Source: Vitrella brassicaformis CCMP3155 (taxonomy: Eukaryota; Protista; Chromerida). From it: 64,000 nucleotides of DNA. Below, piece after piece: positions 13,456 to 20,771 of this stretch. Under the pieces are notes generated by a model that had not been told where the DNA came from, searched no databases, and saw only the letters and a list, made by a program, of their open reading frames with translations. Within the stretch, counting starts at the first letter, position 1; every line of letters starts with the position of its first letter. Made by a program: the position numbers and the translations under genes. The stretch lies in NCBI GenBank assembly GCA_001179505.1, contig CDMY01000562.1, positions 124,001 to 188,000 of the forward strand, given 5' to 3'.

Positions 13456-14187
13456 CTGACTGACTGACGGTGCAAGAAGGAAGGAATGGCCGGACAGAAC
13501 AGACAGGCAGGCGGCAGGAAGTGTGCTGCTCGGAGGAGTGAGTTTATCAGGCAGGCAGGCTGTGACTGACGTGGTGTGGCATGGTCGGCTGTATACACCC
13601 AAGATTGTCTGTCTGATCATGCCAATATATATGCAATTGCAATAGATCAGGAGGGTGGGAAGTACCTATGTACCGGGCAATGGATGTAGGTGGCGCCTAC
13701 CTTGCCATTCTGCAGTGACGCGGCGCCAGTCGAGTCACACGAGTGTGTGCTTGTCAGTCAAGCAAATCAATCATCAAGCAAATCAATCATGTACAAATGC
13801 AATACATTCAGTGAATCACTGCATCACTGCAGAGAACCTTCCTGTGTTCCTGGCCAGGCGGGCCACGAGATGAGGGTCGGTGGTGGGTCATTACACCTAT
13901 GTATGGTCCATCCAGCCGACCTTTGATGAGCGAATGGCGAGCCACAATGGGAGATCCTCGGTCTATGGTCTCACAGCAAGCCAAAAAGCTAAGCTTGCAG
14001 ACCGAGGAAAAAAGACCCTTGCATGTGCATGCGGAGCGTGCGTGGGTGATTCCTGTTGCGTGTCGTTCGTTTGATCAAGACATGGGACCTGGCCTCAGGC
14101 CGCCTAGGGTGCTCCCTGAAACCGCTGAATGAAAAAAAGAGGAAAAAAGAGCCTAGGGGATATAGATGAGATGACGATATAGATGAG

Positions 14188-16006
14188 ATGCACGCGTCAG
14201 CGGCTGTGTACGCGTTATGCGTGGCCTTCCTCAGCCCGCCGCAGAGGCCGCTGCTGCCCACCACCACCAACAGCCTCTCTTACATCACGCCGCCGAGGCT
14301 CAGGTGCGGCGGCGCCCTGCGGATGGTCTTCTCAGATGTGGAGAGGCGGGCGGCGTACCCCTCATCCACCAACTCATTCAAGTAATTGGTGTGATTGATT
14401 GGTTCGTACGTGTGTGCAGGTCTGTGTGTCTGTCTGTGTGTGTCTGTCTGCAGGTCGTCTGACTTCCTGCTGGACCGGTACCTTGGTGCGGTTGGGGTGA
14501 TAACCATCCGGGTGAGAGATCTGATCTGCCAAATCAAATCATGCCACCCACCGGGGACGGTGCGTGTTGAGTGGATGGATGGTGGGTTCTGTCTGCGCTG
14601 TCCTTGCTCCTCTCCTCCAGGACTGGGCCTACTACGATGAGACGACCGGTGAGAAGGTGTCGCCCAACCCGTTTGACCCGCGGTCCCCCCGGCAGACCAC
14701 CGACGAGAGTAGCGCCATGGTGCGCCTCTTCCAGGCGCGGCTCATACCCACCGGCCTCCCCGGCTACCCCGTCCTGCTCAAGGAGTACGCCACCGACGCC
14801 AGACACCTCGCAGAAACCGAGCTAGACATCTATGGTGAGATCATCGAGGACTACAACGCGCGGAAAGGTCTGTCTGAGAAGGCCGTGAGCTTCCCGCCGG
14901 TAGTGCCTGGGCTGGGTCGGGTTGAGGCCGACCCATATCTCGGTACGAACGAGTTCCAGGAGCAGTGGAAGCGGCAGGTGGCCTTCAGGAACGTGCCCCC
15001 ACCGAGGCCAGGCAACATCTGGACGGTCCTGCAGTGGCCCGGCCCCCTGACCTTCGACACATACGACAGGCTCGGGAGGGGGGAGAGGGACGACGTCCTG
15101 GATGGGGTGGTGCCCGGCTTTCGGCTCAAGAGGAAGAGCAGATTCCTCAAGATGGCCATCAGGAGGGCGCTCGAGGCCATCGACTACCTCCACCAACTCA
15201 GGATCGTCCACCGCTCCATATCCCCCGGCAGCTTCGTCCTGCAGGATGCCAACGAGAGAGAGCCGCTCAACGTGAAGGTGCTGATTCAGGACTTCGGCTT
15301 CGCGACCACTCTGCAGCGGCTGGCGCGCAGCGACGATGACGACTCGGTGCGTCGCGCCATGAAGGTTGGGGCGGTGACGCCCGCCGCCATCCTGGACTAT
15401 CTCAAGGCCGAGGACCTCAAGAGCTCGTGTGTAACGTTCCTCTACTTCATCGTGGCCAACCTGTACGATGAGGCCGCGGCCAAGAGGGGCCAGGGGAAGG
15501 GCGGCAGCGACACGGGCAACAAGCGGATGGAGCTCACGCCTGGGGGCTTCAGGCAGACGAGCCCACGGAGCTTCTTGGCTGTCAGGTGGACTGGACAGGG
15601 AGGGAGGGAGGAGAGAGAGAGCGAGACCCGAAGGGAAAAGTACTTACGCACACACGGATGGTTGTGTGCGTGTGTGTGTGTGTGCAGGCGTCTGGTAGAG
15701 GAGGTGTTTGACGGCGACATGAGTGGGCTTCGGGACTACTGGCTCAACGACGAGCCCTTCGCCGATGTGGTCAAGTTTCTGGACCAGAACGACATGGCGG
15801 GATGGGACTTTCTGAGCAGGCTCTACAAGGCGCCCCAGCTGTTCCAGCAGCAGGTCAAGGACACGCAGCAGAGGGGGGGAGAGAGGGAGATCTCAGGAGA
15901 CGGCGGGAAGGGGGAAGTGACAGAGAGGGAGCGGGTGTATTGGAACGCGAGAGACTTGCAAGAGCATCCCTTCTTAGGCGGCAGCGGCAGCGGCAGTCGG
16001 ACGTGA
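14188..16006 (+). CDS. Plastid-targeted STN7/STN8-related protein kinase-like protein, probable pseudokinase
   Basis: Bipartite leader MHASAAVYALCVAF-LSPPQRP... Kinase elements: VLLKEY, ELDIY, IDYLHQLRIVHRSISPGS, IQDFGFA, AEDLKS and VKFLDQNDMAGWDFL. Confidence 0.75.
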
Positions 16007-16412
16007 CTGACGGCCACGGTTACAGACAGACAGACAGACATGACGCGCCGTGCAGTGCATGACTGAGTGGCTGGGGCGGGGGGGAGAGAGGGACATGTGA
16101 GAGCGAGTTTGCAATTTGCAGTCAGTCGAGTTGACGATGGATGGATGGATGTACATACACACGGACAGACAGACAGACAGACAGACGGAGAGGAGGGTCG
16201 TACACGAGCCTCTGTTTTTCGTGTCATGAGTATCATGGATGTCCATGGAATGTGTGCACTGCACTGATCATGTCATGATGGCCAATATAACTGCGAAACA
16301 CCTTCCTCCCTCAACCAAGCCAAGCCACGCCGGCGCATCTTCCTTCGCAACCACCAGCCATCCCATCCCATCCCATGCCATGCCATGCAGCCAGGTCGGA
16401 CGATAGGTAATT

Positions 16413-18645
16413 TCATGCCCTCTTGTTGTCTCCCCTACCCCTACCCCGATTCCCTCGGTCACTTCCACTAGCACCCCCACCAGCCCTCTGCTCTCTCTGC
16501 TCCTTCCTTCTCATTTGCTCTTTCTTGCGCATGACGTTGAGCTTCTTGTAGGCCTCGTGGTGGGCAGTCTTGAACACATTGAAGAACACACCACCCCGAG
16601 TGCGTGCGCGCGTTGGGTCGTCCACACGGTGCATACCTGATCGATCGATCGCACACCAAAGCAAGCCAAGCCAAGCCACATCACATCACGCTGTGTGTGA
16701 GTGTGACTGTGAGAGAGAGTGTGCAGCAATCCATACGCACCACCGGCATTGAGTTCGATCTCCTCTGTCTGTGCGAGCAGGCGCATGGCGGCCCCCACCC
16801 CTATCTCGGTGAGGATGAACTCGAGGGCATCCGCCTGCTCCTCGACCTTCTCGTGCAGCCACACACAGATGGCCTTGGCCACGTTGGACAAAAACGCCCT
16901 CCGCTTCTCATCAGATGGGGCCGTCGGCGTCACCACAGCTGGTGCGGATGTCGACGGGCCATTGACCTCATCTGGGTGGTCGGCGGGGCGAGAAGGGGGT
17001 CCGTCATGTGGTGCAGGTGTCTGTGTGGTCGGCTGGGTCGCCCCGGCATCATCATGGTGGGCGGCACCAGGCCTCTCCGGGAGCCGCCTGTTGTCGGGTG
17101 GCTGTGTTGGCTGTGGCTGGCGTGCGGTTGATGTGAGTCCCTTGGATGCGCTGTAATGTGTCCTGGTGGCTGTTGGCTTGGGGTAGAGCCGCTGCAGGGT
17201 CTGGGTGAGGTCCTTGCTGAAGTAGGCTATGGTGGCCTGCAATGCCAACATAACATGACACACGCGGACACGAAGGACGGACGGACGGCGTGGTTGGGTG
17301 GTGCGTCCCATGGCGTGGTGTCGTGTTGTGGGTGTGTGACATGAGCGAGCATAGCATAGCCGTCCGTCACTGACCTTTTGGTCTTTGTGTGAGGCGAGGC
17401 ACACGCGTTCGATCTCGACGATGGCGAAGCCATGGGTGCCGGCGAGCACCACCAGCTCGCTCACGTCCTGCTGACTCGGCAGATACAGAACCACCGTGCT
17501 GCTCGCCAACCTGTGCAGCAGTTGACACACACACACACACACACAAACACACACGTGAGCAGTTTTGCCGTCCACATTCATCGGCGAGATCTGTCTGTTG
17601 TTCCGCACCTGCATGCGGCTGAGAAGAGTTGCACGATGTCCGGCTCGAAGACGGCCTTGATGGACCACCAGGCCCTCTGCTTGTACACCGGCCCACCCCA
17701 GGGCGGCGACAAGAACACCGCATCGAAGCTCTCCCCCCTCCCCGCCGCATCAGCCGCCCACTCCTCAAACCGCGCCACCACAAACTCAGCCCGATCGCTG
17801 ACACCGTACACCCCCACATTGTGCCTGCCCATGTCGACCTTGGCGGCAGCCAGGTCCACGCCCACGACCTTGTCGCAGTGCATGGCCAGCTGGATGGTGT
17901 TGCCGCCGATGCCGCAGCAGGCATCCACCACAGTGCGGCAGCCGCTGGCCTGCAGCTGCTTGGCGATGCGGGAGGCCGTCCGCTCGGGGGTCACCTCATA
18001 CCAGGCCGACTCGTCCATCTGGATGCCCTCATCGAAACGCGAGAAGAGAGAGTAGCGTTGCTGCCAGTAGCGGTGCAGGTGGCTGGTAAGGCCGGGCGGG
18101 GGCGGGGCGGACGAGTCGCCGAGAGAAGCGGCGTCCTTGTCGTCGTCGTGGGCGGTCGCATCAAGGGAAGAGGGAGGGCTGGAGGTGAGAGAGCCGACCT
18201 GAGTGGCGCTCACGCCCACTGCGGCAGGTTCCTCACTCTCCTCTGGCTGTGGCAGTCCTTGTGACTCGACGGAAGGGCGTGTGGGGACGCTCCGCCGCCT
18301 CGGCTTCGGCAGGAAGAAGGTCTTGAACGTGACAATAGCCACGGACGCACAATACCTCCTCTCCTCTCCACCAGACCCATCCGCTGGTGCGGTCGCTGCT
18401 GCTGTTGTCGTAGTTGAATCAGTGATGCTTTTCGAGCGGAGGAAGTACTCGTGGAGGGCTCGCGTGTTGGCTCCCGCCGCGATGGCGATGTGTATGGAGC
18501 CGGGCGGGTAGTTGGTCTGCCATGAGGCCGCCACGGGAGCGTAGTCCTCCTTCTGCTGGTCCCGGAGGATGCAGTAATACAACAGATCCAGGTAAGGTCG
18601 GGCTATGGAACTCATCGATGAGCCCTCCACAATGAATGAGTTCAT
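16413..18645 (-). CDS. TGS1: Trimethylguanosine synthase fused to a C-terminal PHAX RNA-binding domain
   Basis: RYWQQRYSLFSRFDEGIQMDESAWYEVTPE, VVDACCGIGGNTIQLA, DAVFLSPPWGGPVY, VVLYLPS and ATIAYF. The C-terminus reads VAKAICVWLHE...IGVGAAMRLLAQTEEIELNAG|GMHRVDDPTRARTRGGVFFNVFK. Four exons: 18645-17609, 17510-17375, 17236-16741 and 16636-16413. Confidence 0.93.
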
Positions 18646-18859: not shown

Positions 18860-19909
18860 ATGATGAAGTTCGCAGCAGCCCTCGCCCTCGTTGCCCTCAG
18901 CAGCGTCATGGCAGAGGAGGCGTTCGTGTCCTCTCCCGCCGCCCTGCCGGCCCCGCTCCGCCGGTTTCGTCAGAGCAGTATCCCCCGCATGGCTGTCGAC
19001 ATCTCAGACCTCAATGGGGCGGTGGCTCCCTTTCCCCGTGGCTTCGACCCCCTCGGGCTGGCTAACGGCCCCGATGTCGATGAGAATGAGGTGGGCATCG
19101 AAAGACGCACTGCCAAGCCGAGGGAGGGGATTACTCGGTGTACCTGTCTGTCTGCTGCGTGTGTGTGGGTGTGGTTGTCCTCCACGTGCAGATCAAGCGC
19201 TGGCGTGAGTCCGAGCTGAAGCACGGCCGTCTCTGCATGCTCGCCGCCCTCGGCATTCTCGTGCAGGAGAACTTCAACCCGCTCTTCGACGGCAAGATCA
19301 CTGGACCCGCTATCAGTATGTGGCAGCAACGAGGACCCTCACAGCAGCCAGCCTTCCTGTGCTCACTGTCACTATGTGATGTCCATGTGTGTGCAGATCA
19401 TTTCCAGCAGGTGCCCTTCCCGTTCTGGGCCATCATCGTGGCGGGCATCTTCGGCATTGAGGCCGCCAGGTGAGCTCGACCCAGCCACCCACACACATCC
19501 ACCGAGGCAGCATCTCATCTCTCTGCATTGCGTCTCCGTCCGTGTCCTACCTGTGTGTATTGGTGTTGGTGCGCAGCATCGGCAAGGGGTGGGCCTCCCC
19601 GTGGACTAACAAACTGTTCGCTCTGAGGGAGGACTACGAGGCGGGCGACCTCGGCTTCGACCCCTTCAACCTCACGCCATCTGACCCGGCTGCCTTCGAT
19701 GAGTTACGCGCCAAGGAGCTCAACAACGGCCGCCTGGCCATGATCGCCGTTGCCGGTATCGTTGCCCAGGAGCTCGTCGGTGAGCAGGGAACACGCTCAG
19801 GGAGAGAAGTCGTCTCCACGGGCTCATTGTCTGTGTGGCCTTGTCTGTGCTGTGTGTGCCGTGCTCAGACGGCCAGAAGATTCTGGACCACTTGGGCATC
19901 ACTGGCTGA
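18860..19909 (+). CDS. LHCX: Light-harvesting complex protein, LHCX/LI818 (LHCSR)-type
   Basis: Signal peptide plus transit peptide (MMKFAAALALVALSSVMAEEAFV...). Motifs GFDPLGL, RESELKHGRLCMLA, ITGPAI|NHFQQV, DYEAGDLGFDPFNL and KELNNGRLAMIA. Five exons. Confidence 0.92.
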
Positions 19910-20023
19910 GTTCCGAGTCCTTCGGCTATCAATTCATTCATGCAACTCCCTTGCCTGGCCTGGAATACATGCACGCGATTCTCTCGAGTCATGCAGTTTT
20001 CGACAGAGCATTGGAACAGCAGC

Positions 20024-20028
20024 AGAGA

Positions 20029-20070
<42 letters not shown>
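20024..20070. repeat. (AG)n microsatellite, representative of the many simple repeats in introns and UTRs
   Basis: Directly visible GA run with one interruption. (GT)n, (ACAG)n and (CATC)n tracts occur throughout the window. Confidence 0.9.
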
Positions 20071-20073
<3 letters not shown>

Positions 20074-20771
20074 CGATATAGAGAGGGAGGGAGAGCTGTG
20101 TCCCGAAATTCTGGAGAGTGACAACGGGATCGTCTCAATGAGACGGAGTCCCCATTTCGCATTTCGTCACGTGTGAGAGAGGCATGCAGAGAGGCGGGCA
20201 GGTGGAATGACTTGGTGAGAGCGTTTCTCAGTCAGAGGTTTGATGTTCGCAAATGTTCGTATCCTTCGTCGTACCAAGATCCTAGAGGGCTGCACAGAGA
20301 GAGCGTGAGCTGCGTAGACGTGGGCGATGACAAGCCTTCGTATCTCCGTACGCACAGACGTAATGTGCCACGGCATGGCGTAGCGCTTTCACCACTGTGT
20401 AGGAGAGCTGGAGAGGGCACTGGGGGATATGGAGGGTTGGTTGGGTCACTGGGGGTGGGTGAATTGAGAGGGGTGAGGCTGCGCTGATGGCGTGAGAGAC
20501 GGGGCGTTAGCAGAACCTACAGTAAGTGCGCTGTAGGATGAGACGGGGCTGGTTTCGTGTGCATTGACTCCCGTGAAGCCCTGCCGATTGTACACTGCAA
20601 GGCAAGTCACAGTGCATCACGATACAACACTTCAGTAAGAAGATCCCGCGTTGCGGCCGTCTCGACAACACCACCCTTCATGCGTCGGGACAGAGAGGAA
20701 CTGAATGGATGACTCCGCTAGAACAACACAGATAATGAAGATTCTACGCTGACGAGACCTTTTCCTTGAGA

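What the first reader, a model, noticed from the sequence alone, without database searches (positions are those of the whole stretch)
16413..18645. TGS1 cap hypermethylase fused to a PHAX RNA-binding domain
After a complete TGS1 methyltransferase and a Pro/Thr-rich linker comes VAKAICVWLHE...IGVGAAMRLLAQTEEIELNAGGMHRVDDPTRARTRGGVFFNVFK. This matches the PHAX RNA-binding-domain signature (T.EVE.NGG.....G.RRRTPGGVF.NL.K). The last TGS1 strand (ATIAYF), the linker and the first PHAX helices lie in one uninterrupted exon (17236-16741), so the fusion does not depend on my splice model. PHAX (snRNA export, snoRNA delivery to Cajal bodies) and TGS1 (m7G to TMG) act on the same capped RNAs but are normally separate proteins. 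The fusion suggests a single-polypeptide cap-recognition and hypermethylation unit for sn/snoRNA or spliced-leader-type RNAs. I am not aware of a description of this architecture.
Basis: partly seen in the sequence, partly recalled or inferred. Interest (0 to 1): 0.82.

Follow-up and report, generated by a model that had tools for sequence, protein, structure and literature searches.

The report
TGS1 cap methylase with PHAX domain
This Vitrella brassicaformis gene really does encode the RNA-cap hypermethylating enzyme TGS1 joined to the RNA-binding domain of the snRNA transport factor PHAX. The same join occurs in Chromera, in a gregarine and in several unidentified relatives, so it is a conserved but apparently undescribed variant of a well-known enzyme.

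Summary
Confirmed. Window 16413-18645 (- strand) is a four-exon gene with GT..AG introns at 17511-17608, 17237-17374 and 16637-16740. It is the public Vitrella brassicaformis CCMP3155 protein CEM23153.1 / UniProt A0A0G4G4H0 (620 aa), which starts at ATG 18615.

- **Domains:** that protein scores above Pfam's cut-offs for both Methyltransf_15 (98.6 bits) and PHAX_RNA-bd (41.3 bits).
- **Solved structures:** it matches human TGS1 (3GDH, E 2e-45; model TM 0.92). Its C-terminal domain matches the PHAX RNA-binding domain (RBD) of 2XC7 and the C. parvum RBD 2W4S.
- **Transcript:** a transcript contig 100% identical to the window is spliced exactly at introns 2 and 3 and runs through the PHAX part.
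- **Conservation:** the same order, TGS1 then PHAX RBD, occurs in Chromera velia (Cvel_4631), the gregarine Protomagalhaensia, a Vitrella-like metagenome contig and four unidentified eukaryotic contigs.

Only the RBD of PHAX is present. No export-adaptor motifs were detected.

The most likely mechanism is inferred, not shown. The RBD, on a roughly 100-residue disordered linker and followed by an RGG tail, holds the substrate RNA body while the TGS1 domain dimethylates its m7G cap.

I found no paper describing this architecture, although the proteins are in public databases. I rate it a new variant of a known kind, of moderate interest.

The parts
16413..18645 (-). Whole coding region of the TGS1-PHAX gene.
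   Evidence: ORFs and DNA. tblastn of CEM23153.1 (P0065) maps residues 1-340, 336-549 and 543-620 onto 18615-17596, 17512-16733 and 16649-16416.
17609..18645 (-). Exon 1: the N-terminal region and most of the TGS1 domain. It ends with two bases of codon 336.
   Evidence: Donor AG|GTGCGG. Methyltransf_15 scores 83.2 bits on this ORF.
17511..17608 (-). Intron 1 (98 nt, GT..AG, contains a GT-rich tract).
   Evidence: The alignment to human TGS1 is continuous across the junction. The relative L002 has indels here that are not multiples of three. No transcript in hand covers this junction.
17375..17510 (-). Exon 2: C-terminal strands and helices of the TGS1 domain.
   Evidence: Transcript contig L001 starts inside it, at 17453.
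17237..17374 (-). Intron 2 (138 nt, GT..AG, in frame and without a stop).
   Evidence: Removed in transcript contig L001 and in P0045. L002 has non-3n indels and 87.6% identity here, against 96-97% in exons.
16741..17236 (-). Exon 3: the last TGS1 strand (ATIAYF), the disordered Pro/Thr-rich linker and the first three helices of the PHAX-type domain.
   Evidence: One uninterrupted reading frame. 100% match to L001 bases 78-577.
16637..16740 (-). Intron 3 (104 nt, GT..AG). It splits the PHAX-type domain at the conserved GG.
   Evidence: Removed in L001 and P0045. Only 29 of its 104 nt align with L002.
16413..16636 (-). Exon 4: second half of the PHAX-type domain, the basic helix, the RGG tail and the stop codon.
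   Evidence: PHAX_RNA-bd scores 23.5-26.5 bits on this piece alone.
18109..18615 (-). N-terminal region (residues 1-169 of CEM23153.1). It has no Pfam family and low model confidence.
   Evidence: pLDDT is mostly below 50. No family was found. A short motif near the start is shared with Chromera.
17216..18108 (-). TGS1 catalytic domain including its N-terminal extension (residues 170-388; spans introns 1 and 2). The SPPW motif lies at 17709-17698.
   Evidence: Sequence match to 3GDH with E 2e-45 over residues 170-388. Model against 3GDH gives TM 0.92 and rmsd 1.7 A. pLDDT is 83-98.
16913..17215 (-). Disordered Pro/Thr/Gln-rich linker (residues 389-489).
   Evidence: pLDDT is below 50 for residues 403-485 and for the matching stretch of P0045. 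Linker length varies from about 15-20 to about 900 residues among relatives.
16476..16912 (-). PHAX-type RNA-binding domain (residues 490-600; spans intron 3). The Pfam core, residues 501-578, is 16879-16542.
   Evidence: Pfam 41.3-43 bits. 2XC7 and 8PNT_C match by sequence. Foldseek finds 2W4S (TM 0.74) and 2XC7 (TM 0.59), each with probability 1.00. pLDDT is 85-97.
16416..16475 (-). C-terminal Gly/Arg-rich (RGG-like) tail (residues 601-620).
   Evidence: Sequence. Low pLDDT. Chromera has a much longer RG-rich tail.

Best explanation
The gene is the TGS1 orthologue of Vitrella brassicaformis. TGS1 is an AdoMet-dependent cap guanine-N2 dimethyltransferase that turns the m7G cap of Pol II-made small RNAs (snRNAs, snoRNAs, telomerase RNA) into a 2,2,7-trimethylguanosine cap. 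In this lineage the enzyme has acquired the helical RNA-binding domain of PHAX at its C-terminus, on a disordered linker of about 100 residues and followed by an RGG-like tail.

Shown here:
- the architecture;
- splicing of introns 2 and 3;
- conservation of the catalytic and AdoMet-binding residues;
- the PHAX-RBD fold of the appended domain;
- recurrence of the fusion in other alveolates.

Inferred:
- The RBD binds the single-stranded body of the substrate RNA without sequence specificity and tethers it in cis. This raises the local concentration of the cap at the TGS1 pocket.
- The fusion thereby replaces, within one polypeptide, the hand-over that in animals takes place between free PHAX and TGS1 in Cajal bodies.
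- Because only the RBD is present, the protein is probably not itself a CRM1 export adaptor.
For: **Architecture**
- Pfam on P0065: Methyltransf_15 at residues 227-358 (98.6 bits) and PHAX_RNA-bd at 501-578 (41.3 bits).
- Exon pieces give collinear hits.

**Expression and splicing**
- JGI transcript contig L001 is 99.9-100% identical to the window over its four long aligned blocks (two short blocks of 62-83 nt are about 98-99%) and lacks introns 2 and 3.

**Catalytic competence**
- The alignment to 3GDH was read against the residues listed in PMC2709555.
- Conserved: SPPW = S303-W306, D231 = D696, D254 = D719, W205 = W669, T209 = T673, P347 = P806.
- The N-terminal extension needed for cap binding is present.
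- The model matches the active form of 3GDH with TM 0.92.

**RBD identity**
- 2XC7 E 1.2e-3 with P0065 alone, and 4.3e-6 with a three-sequence profile.
- Foldseek probability 1.00 to both 2W4S and 2XC7.
- G547, R558, G561 and G562 are invariant over 19 PHAX-type domains.

**Selection**
- In the 88%-identical relative L002 the exons are 96-97% identical, carry only 3n indels and have no stops. The introns carry non-3n indels.

**Recurrence**
- The three best non-self hits of an exhaustive search of 1.84 billion representatives (P0047 Chromera, P0048, P0049) all carry both domains.
- So do the gregarine protein P0066 and loci L010 and L011.

**Functional link in animals**
- PHAX carries m7G-capped sca/snoRNAs and probably telomerase RNA to Cajal bodies, where TGS1 makes the TMG cap (PMC10003056).
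Against: - No experiment bears on RNA binding, substrate range or localisation in any of these organisms.
- Some cap or phosphate contacts of human TGS1 are replaced: S671 by E207, R807 by S348, F804 by Y345, K646 by R182. Activity is likely but not proven.
- The exon 1-exon 2 junction is supported by homology, annotation and the indel pattern only, not by a transcript in hand.
- Codon differences to L002 are 30 synonymous to 28 non-synonymous overall, and 7 to 11 in exon 3. Constraint on the linker is therefore weak, and the comparison is too close to say much about the RBD itself.
- Whether Vitrella also has a free PHAX or a second TGS1 could not be checked. Only the 64-kb window is readable, and it holds no second copy.
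Confidence: 0.6

Rival explanations
1. Gene-model or assembly artefact: a TGS1 gene and a separate PHAX-like gene lie next to each other and were read as one.
For: The gene has three introns, and intron 1 is not covered by the transcript contig. The related contig L002 is chimeric at its 5' end, which shows that assemblies of this region can be wrong.
Against: The last TGS1 strand, the linker and the first PHAX helices are one stop-free exon. Transcript contig L001 joins exons 2, 3 and 4. P0049 is one 727-aa ORF on two transcript-like contigs, and P0048 is one 332-aa ORF on a genomic contig. Both domains were found in each of them.
Confidence: 0.02
2. The protein is a true PHAX-like export adaptor as well as an enzyme. 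It would bind CBC-capped snRNA precursors, recruit CRM1 and carry them out of the nucleus, methylating them on the way.
For: The domain is the hallmark domain of PHAX. The N-terminal 169 residues and the linker are unassigned and could hide short linear motifs. An earlier survey found only weak PHAX-like hits in apicomplexans (PMC3032688), so a free adaptor may be missing.
Against: Against full-length human PHAX (8PNT chain C) only residues 240-326, the RBD, align. The elements that build the export complex lie outside the RBD: the ARM, the ST2 cluster, the W118 helix, the NES at 112-162 and the C-terminus. A fragment lacking the RBD still forms the complex (PMC12350170). The compact relative P0048 (332 aa) has no room for them, with the TGS1 domain at 32-190 and the RBD from about 205.
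Confidence: 0.1
3. The appended domain does not hold the substrate. It serves instead for targeting or regulation, for example docking on a scaffold RNA or protein of a nuclear body, or folding back on the enzyme.
For: The RGG-like tail is the kind of element found in nuclear-body and nucleolar proteins (general knowledge, not tested). Linker length varies about 50-fold among relatives, which argues against a fixed geometry between the RBD and the active site.
Against: The residues invariant across PHAX-type domains, including the GG and R..GG motif, are kept. The solved human domain binds single-stranded RNA (title of 2XC7). A flexible tether needs no fixed geometry.
Confidence: 0.2
4. The PHAX-like part is a decaying remnant of a gene fusion, with no function.
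For: Its Pfam scores are lower than those of free PHAX proteins: 20-43 bits against 56-105 bits.
Against: It has been kept in frame, without stops, in at least eight divergent sequences, from chromerids to a gregarine. It is predicted to fold with pLDDT above 90. Core residues are invariant.
Confidence: 0.03

Closest known systems
TGS1 (human TGS1 catalytic domain, PDB 3GDH/3EGI; yeast Tgs1)
   Same: The catalytic domain with its N-terminal extension is shared. It is about 40% identical (E 2e-45), with the SPPW motif, the cap-stacking Trp and the AdoMet-binding Asp residues conserved. The model superposes at TM 0.92 and 1.7 A.
   Different: This protein carries a C-terminal PHAX-type RBD and an RGG-like tail. 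Among the 75 TGS1-type proteins listed, only two carry a PHAX-type domain. Both come from this fused family: P0066 on the precomputed Pfam lists, and the query P0049 on my own scan at 20.4 bits, below Pfam's cut-off. Four substrate-contact positions differ: E207, S348, Y345 and R182.
PHAX, phosphorylated adaptor for RNA export (human; PDB 2XC7 for the RBD, 8PNT for the export complex)
   Same: The helical RNA-binding domain is shared, in sequence (profile E 4.3e-6, human residues 227-328) and in fold (probability 1.00, 31% identity).
   Different: No match was found to anything outside the RBD: no ARS2-binding motif, phosphorylation cluster, CBC-binding Trp helix, NES or C-terminal CBC peptide. 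Here the domain is the tail of an enzyme, not the centre of an adaptor.
Cryptosporidium parvum 'novel RNA-binding domain' (PDB 2W4S, deposited as Ankyrin-repeat protein)
   Same: It is the best structural match to the Vitrella domain (TM 0.74, rmsd 2.6 A) and is also found by the sequence profile (E 2.4e-4). It comes from an apicomplexan.
   Different: Its parent protein is named an ankyrin-repeat protein, not a TGS1. In Cryptosporidium the domain therefore appears to sit in a different protein. I could not fetch the full-length parent.
Fused TGS1-PHAX proteins of relatives: Chromera velia Cvel_4631 (A0A0G4GFG3, 1681 aa), Protomagalhaensia sp. (EukProt, 692 aa), P0048 (332 aa), P0049 (727 aa), and loci L002, L010, L011
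   Same: All share the domain order, the SPPWGG motif, the AYF end of the enzyme and the GG...R(S/T)(R/K)GGVFF core of the RBD.
   Different: The linker is about 15-20 residues in P0048 and P0049, about 100 in Vitrella and Protomagalhaensia, and about 900 in Chromera. N-terminal extensions differ or are absent. The taxa of P0048, P0049, L010 and L011 are unknown.

Membership tests
TGS1 / RNA cap guanine-N2 methyltransferase (Pfam PF09445) | Profile match above the curated cut-off | tested here: met
   98.6 bits against a cut-off of 22 on P0065. 83.2 bits on the exon 1 ORF alone.
TGS1 / RNA cap guanine-N2 methyltransferase (Pfam PF09445) | Catalytic S-P-P-W motif with the Trp that stacks on m7G | tested here: met
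   S303-P304-P305-W306 aligns with human 763-SPPW-766 (residues from PMC2709555). P304, P305 and W306 are invariant in 44 TGS1 sequences, and S303 is nearly invariant, at 90% or more.
TGS1 / RNA cap guanine-N2 methyltransferase (Pfam PF09445) | AdoMet-binding residues (human D696, D719 and the glycine-rich motif) | tested here: met
   D231, D254 and C234-G235-I236-G237-G238-N239-T240 align with human D696, D719 and C699-T705.
TGS1 / RNA cap guanine-N2 methyltransferase (Pfam PF09445) | N-terminal helical extension needed for cap binding | tested here: met
   Residues 170-225 align with the extension of 3GDH. The model matches the active form with TM 0.92. Human S671 is replaced by E207 and K646 by R182.
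TGS1 / RNA cap guanine-N2 methyltransferase (Pfam PF09445) | Converts m7G caps to m2,2,7G | not testable with these tools
   This needs an enzyme or cap analysis.
PHAX-type RNA-binding domain (Pfam PF10258) | Profile match above the curated cut-off | tested here: met
   41.3 bits (P0065) and 43 bits (P0045) against a cut-off of 25, covering profile positions 2-77 of 84.
PHAX-type RNA-binding domain (Pfam PF10258) | Helical fold of the solved PHAX RBD | tested here: met
   The model has pLDDT above 90 over residues 135-244 of P0045. Foldseek gives 2W4S TM 0.74 and 2XC7 TM 0.59, both with probability 1.00, and nothing else above probability 0.10.
PHAX-type RNA-binding domain (Pfam PF10258) | Binds single-stranded RNA | not testable with these tools
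   Inferred from 2XC7 only.
PHAX, the snRNA export adaptor (orthologue of human PHAX) | CBC-binding Trp helix plus NES (human 112-162), ARS2-binding motif, CK2 phosphorylation cluster, C-terminal CBC peptide | tested here: not met
   Only human residues 227-328 align. The listed elements come from PMC12350170. Short linear motifs can escape sequence searches, so this is a failure to detect them, not proof of absence. I do not file the protein as a PHAX orthologue.

The most novel reading that the evidence does not exclude
The fusion arose once, in the common ancestor of apicomplexans and chrompodellids, and took over the job of free PHAX. In this lineage, capture of newly made capped snRNA, snoRNA and telomerase RNA would be coupled physically to cap hypermethylation inside the nucleus, with no PHAX/CRM1 export step. 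The fusion would then be a natural 'Rosetta stone' showing that PHAX's ancestral role is to hand RNAs to TGS1 rather than to export them.
Probability: 0.2. Interest if true: 0.65.

Novelty: new variant of a known kind. Interest (0 to 1): 0.5.

Why it matters
TGS1 and PHAX act one after the other on the same capped small RNAs in animals. A natural, conserved fusion of the enzyme with PHAX's RNA-binding domain is independent evolutionary evidence that the two activities belong together.

It also shows that the PHAX RBD is old and widespread in alveolates, whereas a 2011 survey scored PHAX as an animal innovation (PMC3032688).

The fusion offers a compact natural system, down to 332 residues in one relative, for studying how an RNA-binding module helps a cap-modifying enzyme find its substrates. 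It also provides a marker whose presence or absence could be mapped across apicomplexans and their free-living relatives.

It does not by itself open a long-standing question, and its components are both well known.

Tried and rejected
- **Pfam on exon pieces.** The PHAX hit is split by intron 3 into two weak, collinear pieces, and exon 3 as a whole gave nothing. This was resolved with P0045 and P0065, natural spliced products returned by the databases.
- **A wrong exon 2 coordinate.** I corrected the coordinate from the DNA.
- **Word search with the exon 1 ORF.** It found only ordinary TGS1 proteins and not the window's own protein. The query's length limit of 621 aa sits right at the length of the full product (620 aa).
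- **Alignment A3, fused plus TGS1-only plus PHAX-only proteins.** The PHAX-only rows were placed on the methyltransferase domain. I dropped it and used A2 and A5 instead.
- **Taxon of P0048, P0049 and L002.** A paper search for the run accessions found nothing.
- **Free PHAX in Vitrella.** The best stand-alone hits (P0050, P0051, P0053) come from other samples, and no names are attached to the rest. The question stays open.
- **Metagenome scan with the fused-type profile.** It returned one locus, L006, which is a stand-alone PHAX-like ORF with no TGS1 nearby.
- **Single clade for the fused RBDs.** Scoring with the fused-type profile puts Chromera first among non-training sequences, but the gregarine falls among the stand-alone proteins. 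This is inconclusive.
- **Rfam on the window.** No matches.
- **The paper on the PHAX RBD structure (PMC2874172).** It is not held, so RNA-contact residues could not be mapped.

Two slips, reported as required:
1. In my reasoning I began to recall the dinoflagellate spliced-leader sequence from memory. I stopped and used it in no call.
2. The script tried, in memory only, GT..AG stretches across the in-frame stops of the related locus L010 and printed their positions. Nothing was saved and I make no use of that output.
Full report
**What is there**

The window is nuclear DNA of a eukaryote with 51-67% G+C in 2-kb bins, about 59% on average. On the minus strand between 18645 and 16413 three overlapping ORFs and the DNA give a four-exon gene:

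| Part | Coordinates | Note |
|---|---|---|
| Exon 1 | 18645 (or ATG 18615) to 17609 | |
| Intron 1 | 17608-17511 | |
| Exon 2 | 17510-17375 | |
| Intron 2 | 17374-17237 | 138 nt, in frame, no stop |
| Exon 3 | 17236-16741 | |
| Intron 3 | 16740-16637 | |
| Exon 4 | 16636-16413 | TGA at 16415-16413 |

All introns are GT..AG.

**Domain calls without joining exons**

- The exon 1 ORF scores 83.2 bits for Methyltransf_15, the RNA cap guanine-N2 methyltransferase family.
- The last 55 codons of exon 3 match positions 1-42 of PHAX_RNA-bd at 14.1 bits.
- Exon 4 matches positions 39/48-79 at 23.5-26.5 bits.

The PHAX domain is therefore split by intron 3, and its two halves are collinear.

**Natural spliced products**

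A word search with exon 3 returned two proteins.

*P0045* (265 aa) comes from JGI sample 3300017148.
- Its contig L001 is 99.9-100% identical to the window over its four long aligned blocks, and about 98-99% over two short blocks of 62-83 nt.
- It lacks exactly introns 2 and 3, so it is a transcript.
- It runs from exon 2 through the stop codon into the convergent neighbouring gene.
- P0045 scores 43 bits for PHAX_RNA-bd against a cut-off of 25.

*P0065*, in the same 90% cluster as P0045, is CEM23153.1 / UniProt A0A0G4G4H0. It is named 'Trimethylguanosine synthase' of Vitrella brassicaformis CCMP3155 and has 620 aa.
- tblastn maps it onto the same four exons, starting at ATG 18615.
- Pfam gives Methyltransf_15 at 227-358 (98.6 bits) and PHAX_RNA-bd at 501-578 (41.3 bits).

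The window is thus Vitrella, a chromerid alga related to apicomplexans. The fusion is in the public annotation.

**The enzyme part**

P0065 residues 170-388 align with the human TGS1 catalytic domain 3GDH at E 2e-45. I read the alignment against the residues described for the human structure (PMC2709555).

| Human TGS1 | Vitrella (P0065) | Status |
|---|---|---|
| 763-SPPW-766 | S303-W306 | conserved |
| D696 | D231 | conserved |
| D719 | D254 | conserved |
| W669 | W205 | conserved |
| T673 | T209 | conserved |
| P806 | P347 | conserved |
| K646 | R182 | replaced |
| S671 | E207 | replaced |
| F804 | Y345 | replaced |
| R807 | S348 | replaced |

The AlphaFold model, built on 44 sequences, has pLDDT 83-98 over the domain. 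It superposes on the active form of 3GDH at TM 0.92 and rmsd 1.7 A. This is a complete TGS1 domain, including the N-terminal extension needed for cap binding.

**The appended part**

- By sequence, P0065 513-579 matches the human PHAX RBD 2XC7 (E 1.2e-3) and PHAX in the export complex 8PNT.
- A profile of three fused-type domains raises this to 4.3e-6 and 1e-5, covering human residues 227-328. It also finds 2W4S of Cryptosporidium parvum.
- The model of P0045 has five helices with pLDDT above 90 over residues 135-244 and a disordered stretch before them.
- Foldseek finds only 2W4S (TM 0.74) and 2XC7 (TM 0.59) with probability 1.00. All other matches have probability 0.10 or less.
- G547, R558, G561 and G562 (P0065 numbering) are invariant in 19 PHAX-type domains.

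Nothing outside the RBD of human PHAX aligns. The parts of PHAX that bind CBC, the cap, CRM1 and ARS2 lie elsewhere in the human protein (PMC12350170).

**Linker and ends**

- Residues 403-485 have pLDDT below 50. They are rich in Pro, Thr and Gln.
- The first 169 residues have no family and low confidence.
- The last 20 residues are Gly/Arg-rich.

**Is the fusion conserved?**

An exhaustive phmmer search of 1.84 billion representatives with P0045 gave 20 hits.
- After the Vitrella sequences, the best three all carry both domains. They are P0047 (1681 aa), P0048 (332 aa) and P0049 (727 aa).
- P0047 is Chromera velia Cvel_4631.
- P0049 is a single ORF on two transcript-like contigs. P0048 is a single ORF on a genomic contig next to a rhodanese gene.
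- A word search with P0049 added P0066 of the eugregarine Protomagalhaensia, with Methyltransf_15 at 321-484 and PHAX_RNA-bd at 597-657 (35.3 bits).
- Two short hits turned out to be pieces of fused genes with introns. L010 is 33% identical to the gregarine protein at E 3e-99, with both Pfam domains. L011 is the other.
- L002, a metagenome contig 88% identical to the window, has the same gene. Its exons are 96-97% identical with only 3n indels and no stops. Its introns carry other indels.

The other hits are stand-alone PHAX-like proteins. Of the 75 TGS1-type proteins listed in the two word searches, two carry a PHAX-type domain, both from this fused family. P0066 shows it on the precomputed Pfam lists. 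P0049, the query of the second search, shows it on my own scan at 20.4 bits, below Pfam's cut-off.

The fusion is therefore a lineage feature of chromerids and at least some gregarines. In Cryptosporidium the solved PHAX-like domain is deposited as part of an 'Ankyrin-repeat protein'. The state in coccidia, haemosporidia and dinoflagellates is not known from this work.

**How it most likely works**

*Shown:*
- an intact TGS1 domain;
- a folded PHAX-type RBD;
- a flexible tether between them;
- expression and splicing of the 3' half;
- conservation of the arrangement.

*Inferred:*
- The RBD binds the single-stranded body of capped small RNAs, as the human domain does in 2XC7, and keeps the RNA on the enzyme while both methyl groups are added.
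- In animals free PHAX brings m7G-capped small RNAs to Cajal bodies, where TGS1 acts (PMC10003056).
- The fusion would perform this hand-over within one chain.
- Because the adaptor motifs were not detected, and the 332-aa relative has no room for them, I think an export role unlikely.

The rivals are listed with their evidence in the fields above.

**Novelty**

No paper in the held library combines PHAX and TGS1 as a fusion, or PHAX with chromerids or gregarines. A 2011 survey scored PHAX as animal-specific, with only weakest-category hits in Theileria, Toxoplasma and Cryptosporidium (PMC3032688).

The proteins themselves are public and auto-named. I rate this a new variant of a known kind, of moderate interest.

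- I could not search the rest of the Vitrella genome for paralogues.
- I could not identify four of the source organisms.
- The paper on the RBD structure is not held.
- Contig L012, reached through a protein look-up, looks virus-like. I did not read it further.

Noticed in passing
L012:1-4831 (Logan SRR22279396, contig of 12.8 kb): A 135-aa PHAX_RNA-bd protein (P0062) lies in a row of tightly packed same-strand ORFs beside a 1110-aa product with a D5_N primase-helicase-type domain. This looks like a large DNA virus or virus-like element of unknown host that carries a PHAX-type RNA-binding domain. I did not read it further.
   Followed up: no
window 14145-17453, via L001: Transcript contig L001 runs from exon 2 of the TGS1-PHAX gene through its stop. 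It continues into the convergent kinase-like gene (+ strand, ORF 14564-16006, weak Pkinase hit) and is spliced for both genes. Either the 3' ends of the two mRNAs overlap or the assembler merged them.
   Followed up: partly
L002:1-527: The first 527 bases of the Vitrella-like metagenome contig match window 14930-15456 at 97% in the opposite orientation to the rest of the contig. Its first called gene is consequently a kinase fragment fused to TGS1. This is an assembly chimera or a rearrangement in that relative.
   Followed up: partly
window 17237-17374: Intron 2 is 138 nt, in frame and free of stops, so exon 2, intron 2 and exon 3 read as one 385-codon ORF. The transcript removes it, and the relative L002 has non-3n indels in it. 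If retained it would add 46 residues inside the C-terminal sheet of the enzyme.
   Followed up: yes
L010:3-2099 (Logan DRR142947): A gregarine-like relative (33% identical to the Protomagalhaensia protein, E 3e-99) has its TGS1 ORF and PHAX ORF in the same frame. They are separated by a 460-nt stretch of lower G+C holding five in-frame stops, most likely an intron.
   Followed up: partly
PDB 2W4S (no locus): The best structural match to the Vitrella domain is a Cryptosporidium parvum 'novel RNA-binding domain' deposited under the molecule name 'Ankyrin-repeat protein'. The PHAX-type RBD therefore seems to sit in a different host protein in that apicomplexan.
   Followed up: partly
window 19138-20078 (+): The upstream neighbour, transcribed divergently, is a chlorophyll a/b-binding (light-harvesting) protein gene in at least two exons. 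Pfam Chloroa_b-bind scores 53 and 60 bits on the two pieces. This fits a photosynthetic chromerid.
   Followed up: partly
window 17511-17608 and 16637-16740: Introns 1 and 3 hold short GT/CA-rich simple tracts. Similar tracts appear as Cys/Val-rich runs in many spurious ORFs of the region.
   Followed up: no
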